The notes beneath the pieces are model-generated. The model saw only the letters and a program-made list of their open reading frames with translations, had not been told where the DNA came from and did not search any database. From NCBI GenBank assembly GCA_965649765.1, contig OZ287748.1, positions 8,246,001 through 8,310,000 of the forward strand: DNA of 64,000 nt, read 5' to 3'. The stretch's first letter is position 1. Each line of letters starts with the position of its first letter. Positions 1 to 53,343 of the stretch are shown here, piece after piece. The position numbers were made by a program, and so were the translations under genes. This DNA is from Bispira polyomma (Eukaryota).

Positions 1-1879
1 AAAATCTGAAATGTGAAACAAATCATTGATGTTTTATTACTATATGACCACCACCTGACATATCAGCACCAAGTCTCAGAACCTTCTAATCTAATGTAAT
101 CTAATCAAACTTTTGTAGTGCTTAATCCCCATTAAGGTTGATTCTAAGGCGCATATATCATGATCATATGCAAGTCATGTACTGTCCATTTCTGAAATAA
201 ATATGTAACTAGGGAGGGAAAGCCCTGGAAAACAACAAATGTTTTACCTTCTGATAAATGTATTGTATTTAAATTTATACATTTAGTGCATTTACCTACC
301 TTTATCAAGTATTCAAGAAGCTAATTAACCAATTTCGTGACTGCCTACTTACAGCCGACCAGCACCGGGAAATGTCATTCCTCTAACTACAGAACATTGA
401 TTGTAGCACTATTAAAGTTTATCATTAAATTTATCATTAATTTTAACATCAAGTGATTAATGGTTCCTCAGTTTTGTAAATAAAATGCAAGCTCCTTTGG
501 TATAAAATTTCCCCTAAAATCAAGATGGCTACCATAAAGTTTTGTGGTTTCAGCTGATTTTACAGCAAAATAAATAAATAAAGATACTTTTTCTATTTTA
601 GCCAAGAAGTTTATATTTTTTTACTTCATAAAATTTAATAATACCATGAAATTTTCCCAACATTTTAATAATATAGTTACAGTCATTTCTTGACATATTA
701 TGCGTGGTACTTGTAAATGTGTATCATGTTTTTTGTGAGCAGTTTTATATACATATTTAATGGTCTGTTTATTTATTTATATAGTACGAAATATATGAAG
801 TACATTGTAAAAGCATATATTTATTTCATTAACCTGTGTGCTGTATATGTATGTTTTCCACATGTACTTCTCAAAATAATTTTTCATAAATGTCAAATGG
901 AAAAATACAAATCAATACTCATTATTAGCTGATACATATATACAGTCTTTTTTTTGTTTGTATTTATTTTCGATCATAAGCAGTTTATAATGAGCAAGTG
1001 TTAAGCATAGCAGTGTTCAATGGGTGAATTATTCAGAGAAATACATCCTTACATTATGACCATTTAAACAGTGTATTTTATCAAACAGAGTATATAGTAC
1101 AAGTTGTAGAGTTCTTTGAAAACTGTGTTTTAATCCATTTGTTTTGTTTTTTTCATGATTAATTGACTATTAGAATATAAATTCTCTTTCATTTTAACAC
1201 CTTTTGAAATAAAATCTTTCAGTTGAATCAATACATATAATTGTTAAATGATCAAGAAACATTTTGTAACTAAATTAAAACTGAACATTGCACAACAACA
1301 CTGCAAGCACATTAACAACTTAATACTTTTTTCTTTGTTTCTGTAAATAAATTATAAATATGTATAATGTTTATAGCAAATGCAGTTTGATATTAAATAA
1401 ATAGAATCTAGGTTCTTACGAGTCTTCATGAGACATGTAGTTCTTGTCGTATGTTTTGTGTTTATATTGTATAATATAACTTGATCATGTATAAAATCCA
1501 CCTGAGGCTAGAAAATGTCACCCTAAAAGATGATATTGATTTTATTGTTGATTAATAGTGTTTTCAGTTTCAACTTGTGTTGAACTCTTTATGATATTCA
1601 TGAAGGTTTTTTTGGGGGGGAACTTTTAATGTGAATTGTGTTAATCCAATAAAAACACAGCATATTAGATCATGTTCCTGGGAGGTAATGCAAAACCCTT
1701 ATTATATAAACACAACATCTTAACTTGGCTGGTATTTACAAATATTGATATTCTTAAAGTTTTGCCTCAATCAATTTGATAGGCTAATAATATGGTGTCA
1801 ATGGATCTGATTTGCCGAGACCAAAAAATGCATTCAAACAATAAATCTGATTTGCAGACACCAAGAAATGCATTGAAAA

Positions 1880-40855: not shown

Positions 40856-43800
40856 TCTTTTTTTTTTTATTATTATTATTTCAAGCTTTAAATTTCTTGA
40901 TCCAAAATAATTTATCTTCTTTTCTTTTTTCCTTTCCGTACATAATTTTCCTAGTGTCTAAAATAATTTATTAATTAGATTCCATTGCTTATGGAATATT
41001 TCATACCTTTGTTCTAGTCTGGCAACACATTCCTGTTCTAAATAAATTTTATGTAAGTATTTACTGAAATTTTGTACGCTTAATTGGCTTGTAGACTTTG
41101 ACGTCCAAAATATGTAAACTTTTGCGGTAATATAAACTATGTTTACTACAATGTTTGAACTTTGTGAAAACATCCCAAAAATGATATATTTTCCATTTAT
41201 TGGGAAATCAATTTTAAGATTGACCTTTATTAAAGTTTCAATATCTCCCCAAAATTTTTTAACCTTTTCACATTGGACAAAAAGATGCAGAACTGTTTCT
41301 ATGCCTGTTCCACAAAAGCTGCAAGTTCCATCTGTTGCAATTTTTACTTTGCACAGATGACCCTTAGTTCCTAAAATTCTATACAAAGTGCGATATTGTG
41401 ACCATATGAGGTAGTTGTCTTTAACTGTTTTAAAGCAGATTTTATATATATTTTTCCAGTCTGCACTAGTTAAAGTTATTCCAAGATTGTCCTCCCAGTA
41501 TGAGTAGAATAACTCATCTGGACTCTTTGCATCTATCAGAATTTTGTAGAAATCCTTACTGCCACTGTTTGACTTGTACAGAAGTCTAAAATTATTGGGA
41601 AAGTTGGGTTTTACGTTTTCTGAATGCAGTAGCTTCAGTTTTTCTAGATAACCTTGTATACATGTTATCACTCTATGATATTCTAAGAAGTTAGTTTTAA
41701 TGCCATATACACTCTGTATTATTTCCTGTGAAATAAAGTCGCCATTATTATACATCAGATCACTAGGGGTTAAAATGCCCCTTTTATACCAATGTGGTAA
41801 ATACAGTTCGGCCTTTGAAATATTCGGGTTATACCAAAGAGGATTCGCTAAAGCTGCGGTGATGTCCTTAATCTTTATATTTGCTTGTACATTACTCCAT
41901 GCACTTAAGACCTCTGACCAAAATTTGTTCTTGCATTTCTTTGAAATATTTATTGCATAACCAGATCCTAACATTACAAGACTAGGAGGCGATTGAATAT
42001 AGGATTCTGCTGCCTTTACCCAAGGTGCATCCATATCTGAGTTCGCTCTACGTATCCAAGTTGATTTTAGAGCACTTATATAACTATTAATATCAATCAT
42101 GTTAAGTCCACCTTTGAGATAACTCTTTTTTAGTGTTAACCTTTTAATTTTATCTGGTTTTTTATCCCATATAAAGTTAAAGAACATTTTCTCAAGTTTC
42201 TTCACAAATTCTTTTCCAGGGGATGGAATTGACAAAAAAATTTAATTTTGACAAAGCTAAAGATTTTATAACAGTAATCTTACCAATAGGGGTAAGATAT
42301 CTTCGGTTCCCAACATAAAGGAGTTTCCGAATGTTTTCGAGAGTAGGATTGTAATTGAGTTCTATCATTGCGTGAAGATTTACAGAAAAACATATACCTA
42401 AGAGATTGAAAGTTCCTGATTCACAATCAAAATTCTGGTTAATATTGAGTTTTTCCTCTGAATGAGTTTTGCTTCCAATCCATACAAGTTTAGTTTTGTC
42501 AATATTGATTTTTAACCCTGAGATAGATCCAAATACTTCTAGAGTACTAAGAGCAGCGTCTAATGAGTGCTTTGATCCATTCAGTATCAAAGTGGTATCG
42601 TCTGCGAACTGAGTAAGTTTGTGCTCAAAACCATTGATCTTAATCCCTTTAATGTTTTTATTATTTGTTATCAAAAGATACAAAATTTGGGCACAAAGTA
42701 TAAATAAATAGACTGATATCGGGTCACCTTGTCTGCAACCCCGCTCAATATCAAAAAAACTAGACAGAGTTCCACACTGGAGAACGGCTGCTTTTACATT
42801 AGTGTTCAAGACTGTTATCCGTTTTTTGAAATTTTCTTTAAATCCAAACAAATCCAAAACTGAATTTAGAAATTTCCAAGATACCGAATCAAAGGCCTTT
42901 TCAAAATCTATAAGCATCAAAAGGCCTGGAATGTTTTCTTTTCCTGTGAAGTGCATAATGTCATAGATTAAACGAATATTTTCACCAATGAAGCGATTAC
43001 TTATGAAGCCTGATTGAGTTGGTGAAATAATTTTCCCTAGGACACGTTTAAGCCTTGCAGATAAAGCAGCAGACGCAATCTTATAGAATACTGATAAAAG
43101 TGAGATAGGCCTCCAGTTTTTTAGAAATTGTCTTGGTTTATCTCCTTTTGGGAGACAAGTAATAACACATTGCCTTAAGGATATAGAAAATTGTCCAGTT
43201 TTGTATCCCTCATTTAATGCTCGCAAAACATAAAATTTTAACTTATTCCAAAAAACTTTCAGAAATTCGGCTGGAAAACCATCAATGCCTGGGGACTTGT
43301 GGTTTTTCATTAGTTTCAATGCCATACTTATTTCCTCTAGTGTTAAGAGACCTTCCAGTAATAGTGCATCGGCCTTGGGCAACTTTTTAAAATTGATAGA
43401 GGATTTTAAACTGTTAAATTGAACTTCCGAGTCTTTACCTTGCCTGTATTTGAAAAGATTCTGATAGAACTGTTTTACTTCTTCTAAAATTTCAAATTGG
43501 TCAGTGACAGTTTGCCCATTTGCCTTTACAATTTTCTTTATAGTTTTTTCAGTGTAGAGTTGCTTTTCTAATGAGCAAAAAAATTTAGACGGCTTTTCGC
43601 TTTCTGAGATCCAATGTGCCCTTCCTCTAATCATATGGCCTTTCAATTTTTCATTTCGAACACTTTCGAGTTCTTTCTTTTTTTCATTCAAAAGGTCAGG
43701 GTGAATGGTATCATTTTCATTTTCTAATGATTCAATTTCCTTAATCAGCATTTTTTCTTTTTTGCAGGCCTTTTTTTTGAATTCTGAGGAAAATTTAATG

Positions 43801-44897
43801 GTTTCTCCTCTTATTTGGAGGAGTAGTACTTCTAAAAATTGATTATCTGAAATAGTGAAGTGAATTTCAGAATCTGATAGTTGGTTTACAGTACAAGGGT
43901 TATACACAGGTAATGCATAGTATAACTTTTCTCTATCTATCAAATTATTAATTTTGATTAAATATTCCTTATCTTTCAAAAGAGAGCAGTTAAATTTCCA
44001 TAAACCACGACCTTTTTCAAATTTGCAAATTGTTATTTCAAGAGTACAAATGGAGTGGTCTGTTCTGTAGCCAGGTTTTATCATACAACTACTTATCAAA
44101 TCGGTCAGGTTATCAGATACAACAAAATAATCCAGACGTGCTTTTCTGATAGGATTTTTTCTATGCCATGTATATCTTCTAAGATCCTTATTTATAAGGC
44201 GAAATGCATCTATCAGACCAAGGCTATTCATGGTTTCTATAAGTACATTCCTTGCTCTAGGGTTATTTAGGTGTTTATAGTTATAACAATCCTTTTTAGG
44301 GTCCAATATAAGGTTAAAGTCCCCACATATTATACAATAATCATGTTTAGAAACCTCAATGTCCTGTTGTAGGTCATTGAAAAAAAGAGGGCAATCTGAA
44401 TTTGGAGCATAAATATTTATCAAACGAATATTGTGCTCCTTCAATGTCAACAGTACAGAGATATAATTACCATGACTGTCCTTTTTTATGGATGATATTT
44501 CATATTCAAGATTCTGACCAATCATAATAGCTACTCCCCTTGAATTTGTCTTACTTCCATTTAAGAAACATTCGCCATGCCATATATTTTTTATATACTT
44601 TTCGTCCTCTGTAAGCCAATGGGTATCTTGAAGACAGTAAATTTCATTATTCATATCACCAAGATATTTTAAGACATCTGTACGTTTTTTTAAGTCTCTA
44701 AGACCTTGGCAGTTAACTGAAAGAATTTTAATGTTTGTCGCCATTATACAATTTTATAAAATATGTTGAAACTGTCATTTTTTAGGAATATGAAGCCAGA
44801 CTTTGAAACCATTATTAAAGGCGATGGTCTAGCCATCTGTGTGCTCCAACAACGTGATAAAATTTCTACTGTGATCTTAAAAATATAATTCCAAGAA
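40611..44897 (-). mobile_element. L1/Tx1-clade non-LTR retrotransposon, ORF2 only, nearly intact (one frameshift near 42235)
   Basis: 850-aa and 425-aa overlapping ORFs with APE, RT (GCRQGDP, FADD) and CSFC...H...C. Poly(A) tail present. 15-bp TSD GTATTGTACATTTTT at 40596-40610 and 44898-44912. Confidence 0.96.
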
Positions 44898-48600: not shown

Positions 48601-49490
48601 TGTAGTAAAGATGGATATGATAAGGAGATGGATGGATTTTTGTAGTTTTATAGGGGCTGGGGGGGCGGAGAGGGGGAGAGGGGGGAGGGTTAGAGTTGCC
48701 TCTTAAGTCAGAAGATTGATGCAGAAATGAACCATTTATAGGTTGTCTACATCTACCAACAGCGACTAAAATAGGATGTATAGGGACTGAATATTGACCT
48801 TGAAAGAAGAGCTTTTCTGGTTTATCTAATTTTACTTGTCAAGTTAAATAACAGAAATAAAAGGATGGAAAGGATAGTATAGTCCATTTGAATGTAGCAT
48901 GCACAACTGAAAAAAATGATAGAAGTGTAAAATAGATATACAGCTCTAGAATAACATATGGTCTAAAGCTTTAAACAGTCAAAGTCAGAAAGCAATAATT
49001 TTCATTACCTGTCAGAAAACAATACTTTCAATTACCTGCAATGCCTGTGGCAGTTTTACTTCGAGGGACAGAAATAGGTTCCAGACATGTAATTATTGCA
49101 ATGACTAATAAATAAGTCAAAGTTTATTATCTAATTTGTAAAACTGCACTTAACCATGCAATGTTTTGGAAACAAATATTATAAAATCTAGTTTATTTAG
49201 CCAGTGACAGTAAACTTGGCATGCACAGAGTTGCTACTGAATGCTCAAGCAGCCAACATCCTTACTACATTTGGTCATTGCTTTTCTGAAACTAGTGCAT
49301 TGACTGCTATCAGAATTGGAGAGTATAAATTATTTCTCACTTCCAGTAACTTTATCCTGACACAGATATTTACTAACATTCAGAGATATTTCCTTATTTG
49401 GTCAATATGGAATAAGATCACCTGCTTATTGAAGTAAGGAATAAAAGGGGGTGTAAGGACATAATTACACCAGTAAGAGGGGAATATAAT

Positions 49491-49649
49491 TCATATATAT
49501 TTGTTTATGCCAATAGGGTGAATGGAAGGGACATTCCAGATGTATTATAATTCCTTTCTTCTGCGAATGGATGTGCTATCAGGAATGTTTGGATTTCCCA
49601 ACCATTCTATTACACTGAATTCCATATCATTATGGGTATGTTTTTTCTG
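49491..49649 (-). pseudogene. Penelope-type GIY-YIG endonuclease C-terminal remnant
   Basis: Manual translation QKKHTHNDMEFSVIEWLGNPNIPDSTSIRRRKEL*YIWNVPSIHPIGINKYI* fits the PLE pattern H..D..F..IE...R..(R/K)E..WI..L....P.G(L/I)N. One internal stop. Confidence 0.7.
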
Positions 49650-49872
49650 GGTAGAATATTTAGTAGTTGGAGTGTTTCATCACTGAGATTACTTTTGGGA
49701 AAAGGAGTCCCTGCTCCAGGTGTAATATAGGTGGCTGATTCTACACCTTAGGTGCCAATGGCTGAAATCAAGGTTTCTTGTGATACACTAGTAGACATGG
49801 TATGTTCAGAGGTAATAAAGCATATAAGGGTTTATGTCTTGTGTATGAACAAGTAGACTAAATAATATATGT

Positions 49873-49940
49873 AGCCTGATATATATTTCTTTTATCAATA
49901 TATATTTCGATCTATTCTGTAGAAGATCTCATCAGAGGCT
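49873..49940 (-). ncRNA. Type I hammerhead ribozyme (mirror copy)
   Basis: Reverse complement of 52359-52426. Predicted cleavage after 49878 on -. Confidence 0.9.
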
Positions 49941-52358
49941 GAAATGTTAAAACAACTTATTCTCCTAAGGTATGTTTTATAGCCCCGGTTGCTCCGGTGG
50001 TTGCCCCTGTTGCCCCTGTCATTTAGGGGCTATTTATAGACAGCAAAGTGTTATAGTTGTCCATTTTGTTGGGATATATGGCTATAGGGTGTGTATAAGA
50101 AATATGATGATTTCTTCTGACCTTAGATTAGGGAGTTACCATTTATATCAACTTGCATTTCACTCAAACCCATTGCCCCCTACCGATTTAGGGTGGTTGG
50201 GTGTGATTTATATGGTATACTGTAAAACATGGATAGTTTTAAGAATAAGGCATGATCATATTTGATGAATGGAACTTTATTTATATTAAAAGTTGTGGTA
50301 TCCATATGATCACTTAAATAGTGGTATCATAGTATTTACTGCATCAGATAATTTTAATAACTCAAATTGTAGTTTATTAAAATTAGATAAAAATAATTAA
50401 TGTAATTTTTATACAAAAAATGCCAAACAAAAATGTATATATACAAATAAAAAGGATTACTTATTGAAGAGTATAGATGGGTAGCTTAGGGTGAAAGCTC
50501 TCCATATAGGTCCCTCATTTTCATGATGAAGGAGTTGTCCTTTTTTACCAGTGGGTCTTGCTTCCTCCAACTGGTGCTTAGTGGTTTGTCATGGGTCCCA
50601 TCAATGATCACAGTGTTGGTGGTCAGTGCTGGTTTGGTAGGGGAGTATGCCTCATTCACCAGGCTAGACCAGTAGTTGTGCTGGTATGTGCATAGGTAGG
50701 TGTGGTTCTGATCTGTTGATGTTCCATAGGGAAGTATTCTTTGGATAGTTTGAGTAGGTGGTTCTTAGTGTGAACTTTATTAGGGGTCAGTTTGGGCGAA
50801 TTTTGAATGATGTGTTTTGTTTTCATTAGTACTTCTTTTTTGGCTGTTTGTTTACAATTGGTAGGCCAAGCTATTCTTGGCTTGCTCTGGCCTATATTTG
50901 GATCAGAGAACAGATTTATTTCAGGTATAGGCTTTGATAGAGCCTTGGGTGTTATTTTGTTGTTGTTTTTGGCATTTCGGATTTTTTGTGGTGGAAGCCA
51001 GTTCATTGTTGGCTGGGGTGGTTGCTTTTTTTACCATTGGTGGTGGTAATACTACTTGTGGTGTGGTGGGTTGTATCAGACTGTTGTTGTTAGTAATGTC
51101 CACTGTAACAGCTGATAAGTCAACAAGTTGGTTGATCAAAAGTCCTCAGGATTTTACTTTTGATCAACCAACTTGTTGACTTATCAGCTGTTACAGTGGA
51201 CATTACTAACAACAACAATCTGATACAACCCACCACACCACAAGTAGTATTACCACCACCAATGGTAAAAAAAGCAACCACCCCAGCCAACAATGAACTG
51301 GCTTCCACCACAAAAAATCCGAAATGCCAAAAACAACAACAAAATAACACCCAAGGCTCTATCAAAGCCTATACCTGAAATAAATCTGTTCTCTGATCCA
51401 AATATAGGCCAGAGCAAGCCAAGAATAGCTTGGCCTACCAATTGTAAACAAACAGCCAAAAAAGAAGTACTAATGAAAACAAAACACATCATTCAAAATT
51501 CGCCCAAACTGACCCCTAATAAAGTTCACACTAAGAACCACCTACTCAAACTATCCAAAGAATACTTCCCTATGGAACATCAACAGATCAGAACCACACC
51601 TACCTATGCACATACCAGCACAACTACTGGTCTAGCCTGGTGAATGAGGCATACTCCCCTACCAAACCAGCACTGACCACCAACACTGTGATCATTGATG
51701 GGACCCATGACAAACCACTAAGCACCAGTTGGAGGAAGCAAGACCTACTGGTAAAAAAGGACAACTCCTTCATCATGAAAATGAGGGACCTATATGGAGA
51801 GCTTTCACCCTAAGCTACCCATCTATACTCTTCAATAAGTAATCCTTTTTATTTGTATATATACATTTTTGTTTGGCATTTTTTGTATAAAAATTACATT
51901 AATTATTTTTATCTAATTTTAATAAACTACAATTTGAGTTATTAAAATTATCTGATGCAGTAAATACTATGATACCACTATTTAAGTGATCATATGGATA
52001 CCACAACTTTTAATATAAATAAAGTTCCATTCATCAAATATGATCATGCCTTATTCTTAAAACTATCCATGTTTTACAGTATACCATATAAATCACACCC
52101 AACCACCCTAAATCGGTAGGGGGCAATGGGTTTGAGTGAAATGCAAGTTGATATAAATGGTAACTCCCTAATCTAAGGTCAGAAGAAATCATCATATTTC
52201 TTATACACACCCTATAGCCATATATCCCAACAAAATGGACAACTATAACACTTTGCTGTCTATAAATAGCCCCTAAATGACAGGGGCAACAGGGGCAACC
52301 ACCGGAGCAACCGGGGCTATAAAACATACCTTAGGAGAATAAGTTGTTTTAACATTTC

Positions 52359-52426
52359 AGCCTCTGATGAGATCTTCTACAGAATAGATCGAAATATATA
52401 TTGATAAAAGAAATATATATCAGGCT
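52359..52426 (+). ncRNA. Type I hammerhead ribozyme
   Basis: AGCCT (stem I) - CTGATGA - GATCT/AGATC (stem II, 10-nt loop) - GAAA - TATATATT/AATATATA (stem III) - TC - AGGCT (stem I). All core nucleotides are present. AUC triplet with predicted cleavage after 52421. Confidence 0.9.
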
Positions 52427-52577
52427 ACATATATTATTTAGTCTACTTGTTCATACACAAGACATAAACCCTTATATGCTTATTGAAGTAGACAGTATGC
52501 TAGCGGATCTATATTCCGATGAAATGTTTGATGAACACAGGGAATATTAAGGATTTGTTGAATATGCGAGATCTCAA

Positions 52578-53343
52578 GCCCCCGTCACACAGACCTTTTG
52601 AAGATCTTCCTTGAAAGGTCTTTAAAGGGATTTGTAAGAGTGGTATGCGACCGGTGGCCAACCCCAAAAAGCTCAAAATATGTGTAACTGCTACCAATAA
52701 GTCTTGCAAAGATCCCAGGGAATCGCTAGTGATCGTGGTTTTTCTTTGATTTTAAGGTAGCAGCAGCTTTCTAACTGGTCATGGGCGCTGTGTGACTGGG
52801 GCTTTATGAGACCCAAACGTCAGCAGTACAGCCTGCTTGTTGCAGGTAGTTGCAGAGTAGTTGTTTAGTTCTCACACCAGTGGCATACCAATGGCATATC
52901 GACAAACACTAACAAACACTAACAGTAGATTCTTGTGACACTGATCTGGAATTGATCCACAACCATTATTGGGCAGTCAGTGACTAACTCATCGCTGTCC
53001 ACCAACTTACAACACAAACAATATCTTTTCTTTATGACAGTGCTCGGGGATCAATCCCCAACAAATGGGGTATTACTGGCACAAAGTATAACAAGTCTTC
53101 AATGATCTTTAAAATATTTGACTAAGACGTACAATGGTCTGCAATCTATGTTTAGTCGTGTTACACACTCGCAAGACCTCTGTAAGACCAATCCTTACAA
53201 ATCTGACTGGTTGTCCATAGTCGCCGCCAAATGGTCTTACGATGATTCTGCGACTGGTCGCATAATAATCGGTGACCACATTTCTGTGTGACTGCCACTT
53301 ACGATTTTGGTCAGACCTTCAGGTCTTCGGTCTCATACAGTCT
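52578..53343. mobile_element. Two adjacent MITEs (AGCCCC..TCACAC/GTGTGACTGGGGCT and ATGAGACC/GGTCTCAT termini)
   Basis: Inverted termini at ~52578/52802 and ~52800/53343. Confidence 0.5.

What the first reader, a model, noticed from the sequence alone, without database searches (positions are those of the whole stretch)
49423..52490. TSD-bounded fold-back retroelement: 2.66-kb palindrome with twin outward-facing hammerhead ribozymes and a GIY-YIG stub, but no RT
Seen in sequence: a 14-bp direct repeat (TGCTTATTGAAGTA) brackets 3040 bp made of a 381-bp unique segment and two 1326-bp inverted arms separated by 12 nt. Each arm carries a complete hammerhead, and the unique segment encodes a PLE-like endonuclease C-terminus in the same sense as the adjacent hammerhead. 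Established: Penelope-like elements (PLEs) carry hammerheads in their pseudo-LTRs, encode GIY-YIG endonucleases, can form inverted structures and leave TSDs of roughly this size; retrozymes are non-autonomous hammerhead retroelements. Inference: this is one insertion of a non-autonomous PLE derivative arranged head-to-head, with both outer ends being RNA 3' ends. Transcription across it in either direction would give a ~1.3-kb dsRNA hairpin with a hammerhead near its 3' base. That makes it a possible self-processing siRNA/piRNA source or an unusual replication intermediate.
Basis: partly seen in the sequence, partly recalled or inferred. Interest (0 to 1): 0.88.

Follow-up and report, generated by a model that had tools for sequence, protein, structure and literature searches.

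The report
Head-to-head insertion of a gutted Penelope element
This is a real, very young insertion of a protein-less deletion derivative of a Penelope-like jumping gene, laid down in the two-inverted-arms form that is already typical of that class, so it is a clean example and not a new kind of element.

Summary
There are two 1326-nt inverted arms with 2 mismatches, a 381-nt one-sided segment, a 14-bp target duplication, and a canonical type I hammerhead in each arm facing outward.

It is one copy of an abundant family, 97-100% identical, in this 1.04-Gb animal genome. The family unit is 2079 bp and often sits in tandem arrays. It is a double-deletion derivative of an autonomous Penelope-like element (PLE) found in the same genome. 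That parent carries ORF1, RT/GIY-YIG ORF2 and a two-finger C2H2 gene. The "stub" is 88% identical to the parent's endonuclease C-terminus.

Six TSD-verified family insertions, plus one read from coordinates only, all have two head-to-head arms. One arm ends 59 nt past the hammerhead cut (T2). The other ends about 60 nt past the ORF2 stop (T1). The 12-nt "spacer" is element sequence.

The best reading is that both nicked target strands primed reverse transcription, one at T1 and one at T2. In this copy both cDNAs ran to nearly the same RNA 5' end.

Inverted 5'-truncated copies, a one-sided "tail" and 8-14-bp TSDs are published PLE hallmarks. The unusual point is that the two ends lie so far apart. 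This scan had already noted that feature for the autonomous family on other DNA. The hairpin-RNA idea is untested, and this copy lacks the family's promoter segment. No read-level check was possible.

The parts
49423..49436 (.). Left copy of the 14-bp target-site duplication TGCTTATTGAAGTA. Its last 2 nt (TA) could equally be unit positions q1709-1710.
49437..49817 (-). One-sided 'tail' of the left copy, unit positions q1708 down to q1327. It runs from end T1 (about 60 nt past the ORF2 stop) back to site T2.
49494..49676 (-). Decayed C-terminus of the PLE endonuclease ORF. There are two open pieces, 49548-49676 and 49494-49544, separated by an in-frame stop. The internal-deletion joint to the ORF1 start lies at about 49658-49661 (q1483-1486).
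49751..49798 (-). Remnant of the ORF1 start (MSTSVSQETLISAIG...), homologous to the ORF1 starts of autonomous PLEs in this genome.
49818..51143 (-). Left arm, unit q1326 down to q1, sense on the minus strand.
49873..49940 (-). Type I hammerhead of the left arm. The predicted cut lies between 49877 and 49876.
   Evidence: mirror of the right-arm motif
50486..51139 (-). Frameshifted C-terminal half of the parent's zinc-finger ORF. The fingers and the start codon were removed by a 780-bp deletion at q50.
51144..51155 (+). 12 nt that continue the right copy upstream (unit q2068-2079). This is not a foreign spacer.
51156..52481 (+). Right arm, unit q1 to q1326, ending at site T2 (...CCCTTATATGCTT). 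Its last 5 nt are shared with the TSD.
52359..52426 (+). Type I hammerhead of the right arm. The predicted cut lies between 52422 and 52423, 59 nt before the arm end.
52477..52490 (.). Right copy of the 14-bp target-site duplication.

Best explanation
Window 49437-52476 is one recent insertion of a non-autonomous Penelope-like element. The family unit is 2079 bp. It derives from an autonomous PLE of the same genome by two deletions. One removes ORF1 and ORF2 from about codon 47 of ORF1 to about 60 codons before the ORF2 stop. The other removes 780 bp, including both C2H2 fingers of the element's third gene. No reading frame remains intact, so the element must be copied in trans by the parent's RT/GIY-YIG protein.

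Proposed mechanism (inferred): the target was nicked on both strands 14 bp apart, and both 3'-OH ends primed reverse transcription. One primed at site T1 (unit q1708, about 60 nt past the ORF2 stop). The other primed at site T2 (q1326, 59 nt past the hammerhead cut and about 20 nt before the ORF1 ATG). The two cDNAs ran toward the RNA 5' end and were joined head-to-head. In this copy both stopped within 12 nt of each other (q1 and q-12), just downstream of a TATA-like box. That looks like run-off at the 5' end of a transcript started at the promoter of the zinc-finger gene.

The templates were not cleaved by the hammerhead, because both arms cross the cut site. The copy lacks the unit's CRE/TATA segment and is probably silent unless read through from outside.
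For: Family and parent
- The own-genome search gives at least 200 candidates at 97-100% identity and tandem arrays with a 2079-bp period.
- L028-L030 carry the same sequence plus 780 bp that restores a 417-codon frame with weak Pfam C2H2 hits in the two finger-like stretches (E 3.6e-4 and 1e-3, both below Pfam's cut-offs). They also carry an intact endonuclease C-terminus, with ORF1 and the start of ORF2 after T2.
- Stub homology is shown. RVT_1 and GIY-YIG are found in a sister PLE ORF2.

Architecture
- The window plus five other insertions (C7, C5, C9, C10 and a 24-kb C6 array) have TSDs of 10-14 bp, with one arm ending at T1 and the other at T2. A seventh locus (C2) shows the same by coordinates.
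- 7 of 7 heterotypic insertions has p = 0.008 if the two ends were chosen independently and equally.
- A single-arm copy has an 8-9-bp TSD.
- In two other PLE families (L061, L062) the inverted arm ends at or near a T1-like site (by the BLAST boundary, 64-73 nt past the ORF2 stop; by the motif in L061, somewhat less), while the sense arm reads through it.
- T1 and T2 share an ACCCT...TTAT...C(C/T)T|TAT motif.

This copy
- The 12-nt centre is unit sequence oriented with the right arm.
- The two arm mismatches are private singletons against 43-48 other copies.

Literature
- PLE insertions commonly have an adjacent inverted 5'-truncated copy, a one-sided tail and short TSDs (PMC8557442, PMC3846280).
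- A purified PLE protein cleaves and extends both target strands. It starts reverse transcription at two internal RNA sites shortly downstream of the hammerhead and uses uncleaved RNA (PMC11167929).
Against: No empty allele or paralogous empty site exists in the assembly.

The two-primer mechanism is inferred from end structures only. The transcription start near q-12 is inferred from a TATA-like box and from a small post-hoc cluster of inner arm ends: 4 of about 24 lie at q-12..25, and a second cluster lies at q163-179.

In the published in vitro system the two start sites are only tens of nt apart and show no strand preference. Here they are 381 nt apart (kilobases in the parent) and strictly paired, which that system does not predict.

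The near-perfect symmetry of this particular copy is also what a snap-back would give.
Confidence: 0.75

Rival explanations
1. Snap-back (self-priming). A single cDNA folded back on a 12-nt loop and copied itself, giving the palindrome. This is the reading of the sibling note s1-627101, and self-priming has been proposed for PLE inverted junctions (PMC3846280).
For: The arms start at q1 and q-12, a nearly perfect palindrome with a 12-nt loop. PMC3846280 argues for self-priming from palindromes at inverted junctions.
Against: The loop is oriented as the continuation of the T2 arm, so only the T2-primed cDNA could have snapped back. Its copy would then end at T2 and run into flank. It could not carry the extra 381 nt up to T1.

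Snap-back of the T1-primed cDNA predicts the opposite loop orientation, plus trimming at exactly the recurrent T2 site.

Sister insertions with the same T1|T2 ends have non-mirror junctions, for example q897|q163, q179|q1498 and q1|q848. Self-copying cannot give these.
Confidence: 0.12
2. Assembly fold-back artefact: a chimeric long read or a mis-join created the palindrome.
For: PLE tandem and inverted structures are known to trouble assemblies (PMC8557442). One sister locus (L027, C6:45.04 Mb) is a palindrome that includes its flanks and may be such an artefact or a true inverted duplication. No reads could be laid.
Against: The two flanks are different single-copy sequences sharing only the 14-mer. 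The arms differ at two private sites and in length, by 381 nt and 12 nt. Five other loci show the same T1|T2 design with their own TSDs.
Confidence: 0.04
3. Two independent insertions in opposite orientation, or a later inversion or recombination, produced the pair.
For: The family is abundant and active, so nested hits are possible.
Against: One TSD brackets the whole structure. No second TSD or target sequence lies between the arms. The arms differ only by two private changes. The same pairing recurs 7 of 7 times.
Confidence: 0.03
4. The locus works as a hairpin-RNA source for siRNA or piRNA. This is compatible with any origin.
For: Read-through transcription would give a ~1.3-kb perfect hairpin. 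Small-RNA profiles that switch polarity across inverted PLE halves are reported in a rotifer (PMC3846280).
Against: The CRE cluster and the TATA-like box of the unit (q1709-2067) are absent from this copy. No ORF of 110 codons or more, apart from those of transposable elements, lies between 44.5 kb and the window's end. No RNA data could be consulted.
Confidence: 0.1

Closest known systems
Canonical endonuclease-positive Penelope-like elements and their insertion form: pLTRs, an adjacent inverted 5'-truncated copy, a one-sided 30-40-bp tail and short TSDs (PMC8557442, PMC3846280)
   Same: Both have a head-to-head inverted copy and TSDs of 8-14 bp. One end is longer than the other, a hammerhead lies upstream of the ORF start, tandem and partial-tandem copies occur, and the parent encodes RT plus a C-terminal GIY-YIG.
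   Different: The extra piece at one end is 381 nt here (the whole ORF1-ORF2 span in the parent) instead of 30-40 bp. The reason is that the two ends lie on either side of the coding region. The hammerhead has a full 9-bp stem III rather than the minimal PLE variant. This copy has no RT at all.
PAc (Poseidon of Anolis) in vitro system (PMC11167929)
   Same: Both target strands are used as primers. Initiation is internal to the RNA, a few tens of nt downstream of the hammerhead cut, in an AC-rich context. Uncleaved RNA is the template. The target is AT-rich.
   Different: In PAc the two start sites are adjacent and show no strand bias. Here the two sites are far apart and always paired one per arm. 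A few nt of target/end microhomology are seen at some junctions (TGCTT, TA).
Metazoan non-LTR retrozymes (PMC7229834; bioRxiv 10.64898/2026.07.22.740005)
   Same: Both are non-autonomous, carry a type I hammerhead, form tandem repeats, are AT-rich, have TSDs longer than 4 bp, and are presumed to be mobilised by PLEs.
   Different: The unit is 2079 bp (a 1670-bp variant also exists) against about 170-400 nt. It still carries recognisable ORF remnants and its parent is identifiable. Insertion ends lie at T1/T2, not at the ribozyme cut. circRNA was not tested.
L1 twin priming (from my own knowledge: Ostertag and Kazazian 2001)
   Same: The second target strand primes on RNA instead of on the first cDNA, giving an inverted 5' part inside one TSD.
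   Different: In L1 the inverted and direct parts are different, non-overlapping RNA segments. Here the arms cover the same 1326 nt, so two templates or two passes are needed, and the second start site is fixed.

Membership tests
Penelope-like element (as a non-autonomous derivative) | PLE-type reverse transcriptase ORF | tested here: not met
   No RT lies in 49437-52476. The parent copy L028 continues into ORF1 and ORF2, and a sister ORF2 has RVT_1. This is therefore a derivative, not an autonomous member.
Penelope-like element (as a non-autonomous derivative) | GIY-YIG endonuclease | tested here: inconclusive
   Only about the last 60 codons remain. They are 88% identical to the parent's C-terminus, and 48% (E 4e-13) to residues 751-792 of an ORF2 whose Pfam GIY-YIG spans 709-786. 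The stub alone gives no Pfam hit.
Penelope-like element (as a non-autonomous derivative) | Tandem or partial-tandem copies (pLTR formation) | tested here: met
   Arrays with a 2079-bp and a 1670-bp period, and partial tandems inside TSD-bounded insertions. The window copy itself is less than one unit per arm.
Penelope-like element (as a non-autonomous derivative) | Adjacent inverted 5'-truncated copy with an extension at one end only | tested here: met
   The window plus six other loci. The extension is 381 nt, not 30-40 bp.
Penelope-like element (as a non-autonomous derivative) | Short TSD of variable length | tested here: met
   TSDs of 14, 11, 10, 14, 11, 13 and 8-9 bp at seven loci.
Type I hammerhead ribozyme | Conserved core (CUGAUGA, GAA, cleavage-site H) with helices I-III, open at helix I | tested here: met
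   Read directly from the sequence. The MFE fold reproduces the junction. The homologous motif of another PLE family keeps stem III through a T-A to C-G double change.
Type I hammerhead ribozyme | Match to a curated Rfam hammerhead model at its gathering score | tested here: not met
   Only RAGATH-1-hammerhead at 25.9 bits against 56.3, E 0.36. Sister PLE loci give no hit either.
Type I hammerhead ribozyme | Self-cleavage | not testable with these tools
   Needs an in vitro transcription and cleavage assay.
Metazoan non-LTR retrozyme | Tandem repeats, each with a type I hammerhead, with no coding capacity | tested here: met
   One hammerhead per 2079-bp unit in the arrays. All frames are broken.
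Metazoan non-LTR retrozyme | Small unit (about 170-400 nt) expressed as circular RNA | tested here: not met
   The unit is 2079 or 1670 bp. circRNA is not testable here.

The most novel reading that the evidence does not exclude
In this PLE lineage the two nicked target strands are extended from two different, fixed and distant RNA sites. One lies just before ORF1 and one just after ORF2. They are strictly paired, one per arm, which points to a concerted and asymmetric two-strand target-primed reverse transcription by a dimeric RNP. The gutted 2-kb, tandem-forming, canonical-hammerhead derivative would then be a caught-in-the-act intermediate between autonomous PLEs and small retrozymes. Its near-symmetric copies would mark the template's 5' end.
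Probability: 0.45. Interest if true: 0.6.

Novelty: new variant of a known kind. Interest (0 to 1): 0.38.

Why it matters
The PLE transposition mechanism is still poorly understood. The only biochemical system reports extension of both strands and internal initiation at two adjacent sites.

This young family offers natural products of the reaction in which both primer-extension starts can be read off: the ends, the TSDs and the head-to-head joints. They show a strict one-of-each pairing of two distant start sites.

The family also provides a clear parent-to-derivative pair that links an autonomous PLE to a retrozyme-like tandem repeat carrying a canonical type I hammerhead. That bears on the proposed PLE origin of animal retrozymes.

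For the window itself the practical message is annotation. This is an ordinary non-autonomous PLE insertion, not a new class of element.

Tried and rejected
- Rfam at E up to 1 on the region and on three sister loci: no hammerhead family reaches its threshold. The call therefore rests on the motif and the fold. The miRNA-family hits at the palindrome centre are just the inverted repeat.
Assembly validity, the empty allele, RNA starts and small RNAs remain unchecked.
- Paralogous empty site: the left flank is single-copy. The first 157 nt of the right flank are single-copy, followed by a dispersed ~175-bp repeat. No empty site exists in the assembly.
- Census of ends with short queries spanning q2079/q1, T2 and T1: the tool lists only the best full-length matches, so truncated ends could not be counted.
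As a result the far ends of L061 and L062, the full-length parent, and the short-arm loci on C5, C8 and C12 were not read.
- Pfam on the stub alone and on the parent's 80-aa C-terminus gave no hit. Homology was shown by pairwise comparison instead.
- I first read 'YITPGAG' in the tail as a decayed YIG motif. I rejected this because that stretch is the ORF1 N-terminus upstream of the deletion joint.
- A DIRS-like or DNA-transposon reading was considered and dropped. The TSDs, 5' truncations, PLE parent and hammerhead all fit a PLE.
Full report
**Observation**

The region was read and its repeats were computed.
- The arms are 49818-51143 and 51156-52481, each 1326 nt. A direct comparison finds two mismatches, at 50553 and 51081.
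- The 14-mer TGCTTATTGAAGTA occurs only at 49423 and 52477 in the 64-kb window.
- The window has 34.9% G+C and no N.

Each arm carries, facing outward, AGCCU-CUGAUGA-(stem II)-GAA-(9-bp A/U stem III)-UC^AGGCU. The minimum-free-energy fold of 52352-52432 is exactly the type I three-way junction. Rfam gives only a sub-threshold match to RAGATH-1-hammerhead (25.9 against 56.3 bits). The hammerhead call therefore rests on the core, the helices and homology, not on a curated model. The predicted cut is at 52422|52423, 59 nt before the arm end.

**It is one copy of a large, young family**

The window lies at C1:8246001-8310000 of a 1.035-Gb, 75-contig genome.
- The arm finds at least 208 candidates, and the scored ones are 97-100% identical.
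- The 381-nt one-sided segment finds at least 166 candidates.
- On C6:738-763 kb the copies form a head-to-tail array with a 2079-bp period: arm (1326), the 'unique' segment (381/382), then 371 more nt.

I used one genomic unit (L003:1501-3579) as the coordinate system, written q1-q2079.

The last 12 nt of that unit are CCTCAGGATTTT, which is the window's 'spacer'. The right copy is therefore q2068-2079 plus q1-1326, and the left copy is q1-1708. Variants exist: a 1670-bp unit lacking q183-587 (arrays on C13), and a form with 780 extra bp at q50.

**The parent**

The 780-bp-longer copies (L028-L030) are copies of an autonomous PLE. They contain:
- an intact endonuclease C-terminus (L030:2-241);
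- a cluster of TGACGTCA sites;
- a 417-codon open frame with two C2H2-like fingers. The Pfam zf-C2H2 hits are weak (E 3.6e-4 and 1e-3) and below the cut-offs;
- the hammerhead, and then ORF1 and the start of ORF2 (L028:2930-4278).

The window's stub piece 49548-49676(-) is 88% identical to the parent's C-terminus. It is 48% identical (E 4e-13) to residues 751-792 of an 810-aa ORF2 from another PLE family, in which Pfam finds RVT_1 and GIY-YIG at 709-786.

The tail also keeps the ORF1 start (MSTSVSQ..., 49798 downward), which matches the ORF1 starts of other PLEs here. BLAST boundaries place the deletion joint at q1483-1486.

The element is thus the parent minus ORF1/ORF2 and minus the zinc fingers. 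The remaining zinc-finger frame is split by frameshifts into 72-, 116- and 57-codon pieces. The genome holds at least 775 GIY-YIG candidates, many as minus/plus pairs a few kb apart. PLEs are therefore abundant and active here.

**Two fixed ends**

Mapping 63 fetched loci on the unit and reading the flanks gave six TSD-verified two-armed insertions.

| Locus | TSD length |
|---|---|
| Window | 14 bp |
| C7:8.86 Mb | 11 bp |
| C5:45.86 Mb | 10 bp |
| C9:57.89 Mb | 14 bp |
| C10:43.29-43.30 Mb (about 3.5 + 1.1 units) | 11 bp |
| 24-kb array, C6:738595-762788 | 13 bp |

C2:10.68 Mb shows the same design by coordinates only.

In all seven insertions one arm ends at q1326 (T2, ...CCCTTATATGCTT) and the other at q1708 (T1, ...CTTTTATTCCT). 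If each arm chose its end independently and equally, 7 of 7 heterotypic insertions has p = 0.008.

Single-arm copies can end at either site. L011 ends at T1 with an 8-9-bp TSD, and L029 and L030 end at T2.

T1 lies about 60 nt past the ORF2 stop. T2 lies 59 nt past the hammerhead cut and about 20 nt before the ORF1 ATG. The two sites share an ACCCT...TTAT...C(C/T)T|TAT motif.

In two other PLE families (L061, L062) the inverted arm ends at or near a T1-like site. By the BLAST boundary that is 64-73 nt past the ORF2 stop, and by the motif in L061 it is somewhat closer. The sense arm reads through that site. My result for the non-autonomous family is independent of it.

**What is known**

- Craig et al. 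(PMC8557442) state that PLE insertions are often partial tandems. [quoted passage not shown]
- Arkhipova et al. (PMC3846280) describe the typical form, pLTR-ORF-pLTR plus an adjacent inverted pLTR. It has 8-10-bp TSDs and a 31-bp tail on one inverted pLTR. They propose self-priming.
- Frangieh et al. (PMC11167929) show that a purified PLE protein cleaves and extends both target strands. It initiates internally at two adjacent RNA sites about 90 nt past the hammerhead cut, equates the tail with the interval between those sites, and uses uncleaved RNA.
- Non-autonomous PLE relatives are known: retrozymes (PMC7229834; the 2026 preprint) and non-autonomous Chlamys elements.

The window's architecture is therefore the class norm.

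**Mechanism for this copy (inferred)**

In the product, the plus strand runs left flank, 14-mer, then antisense of q1708..q1. The minus strand runs right flank, 14-mer complement, then antisense of q1326..q-12. This is the geometry of two 3'-OH ends at nicks staggered by 14 bp, each priming a cDNA. The two cDNAs were then joined at their 3' ends.

Snap-back is disfavoured for three reasons:
- The 12-nt centre is oriented as part of the T2 arm, so only the T2-primed cDNA could have folded back. Its copy could not contain the 381 nt beyond T2.
- Snap-back of the T1-primed cDNA predicts the opposite loop orientation.
- Sister insertions have non-mirror joints, such as q897|q163, q179|q1498 and q1|q848.

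Both arms here stop at q1 and q-12. This is 20-30 nt downstream of a TTTAAAATA box and about 270-310 nt downstream of the CRE cluster. Another locus also has an inner end at exactly q1, and one has it at q25. I read this as run-off at a transcript 5' end. That reading is post hoc, and a second cluster at q163-179 is unexplained.

Both arms cross the ribozyme cut, so the templates were uncleaved.

The two arm differences are private singletons against 43-48 other copies. The arms were therefore identical at insertion, and the event is very recent.

**Function**

The copy lacks q1709-2067, which holds the CRE sites and the TATA-like box. It has no intact frame, so it is most likely an inert product. 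A read-through transcript would fold into a long hairpin. Whether that feeds small-RNA pathways could not be tested.

**Limits**

This stopped a wider census and the reading of several short-arm loci.
- The flanks are single-copy, so no empty site is available.
- The organism was not identified.

**Verdict**

The family's widely separated, strictly paired ends and its clear PLE-to-retrozyme-like derivation are the modestly new points.

Noticed in passing
L027 (G000:C6:45040964-45045269): Two arms of the same family both run about 9 nt past T1 (to q1717), and their flanks are reverse complements of each other. The palindrome therefore includes host DNA. This is either an inverted duplication or an assembly fold-back, unlike the TSD-bounded insertions.
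   Followed up: partly
G000:C6:738595-762788 (L006, L034, L035): A 24-kb array of about 2 units in minus and about 9 units in plus orientation (2079-bp period) is bracketed by one 13-bp TSD, TTAATATAGATTT. Either multi-unit tandems are made within one insertion event (multimeric or circular template) or the array expanded later.
   Followed up: partly
G000:C5:22880505-22880554 (coordinates; letters not fetched): The T2 arm is only 50 bp long (q1277-1326). Its inner end lies about 9 nt from the hammerhead cut, as expected for run-off on a ribozyme-cleaved template.
   Followed up: no
unit q-12..25 and q163-179: The inner ends of arms cluster at two places: 4 and 5 of about 24 endpoints. These may be alternative RNA 5' ends or strong RT stops.
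   Followed up: partly
L028:857-2107, L029:857-2107, L030:857-2107: The parent PLE keeps an intact 417-codon frame with two C2H2 fingers between the endonuclease ORF and the hammerhead, preceded by TGACGTCA sites. Other PLE families (L061:6039-7118, L062:7247-7957) have a gene in the same place. Earlier notes of this scan also report this.
   Followed up: partly
window 52634-52806: A ~175-bp dispersed repeat with at least 300 candidate copies at 86-92% identity starts 157 nt right of the insertion. It looks SINE- or MITE-like.
   Followed up: no
G000:C13:2183774-2205587 (L048-L052, L060): A long array of a 1670-bp variant unit that lacks q183-587.
   Followed up: no
window 42192-44744 (-): An 850-aa open frame resembling an L1/Tx1-type endonuclease-RT protein lies about 5 kb left of the insertion.
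   Followed up: no
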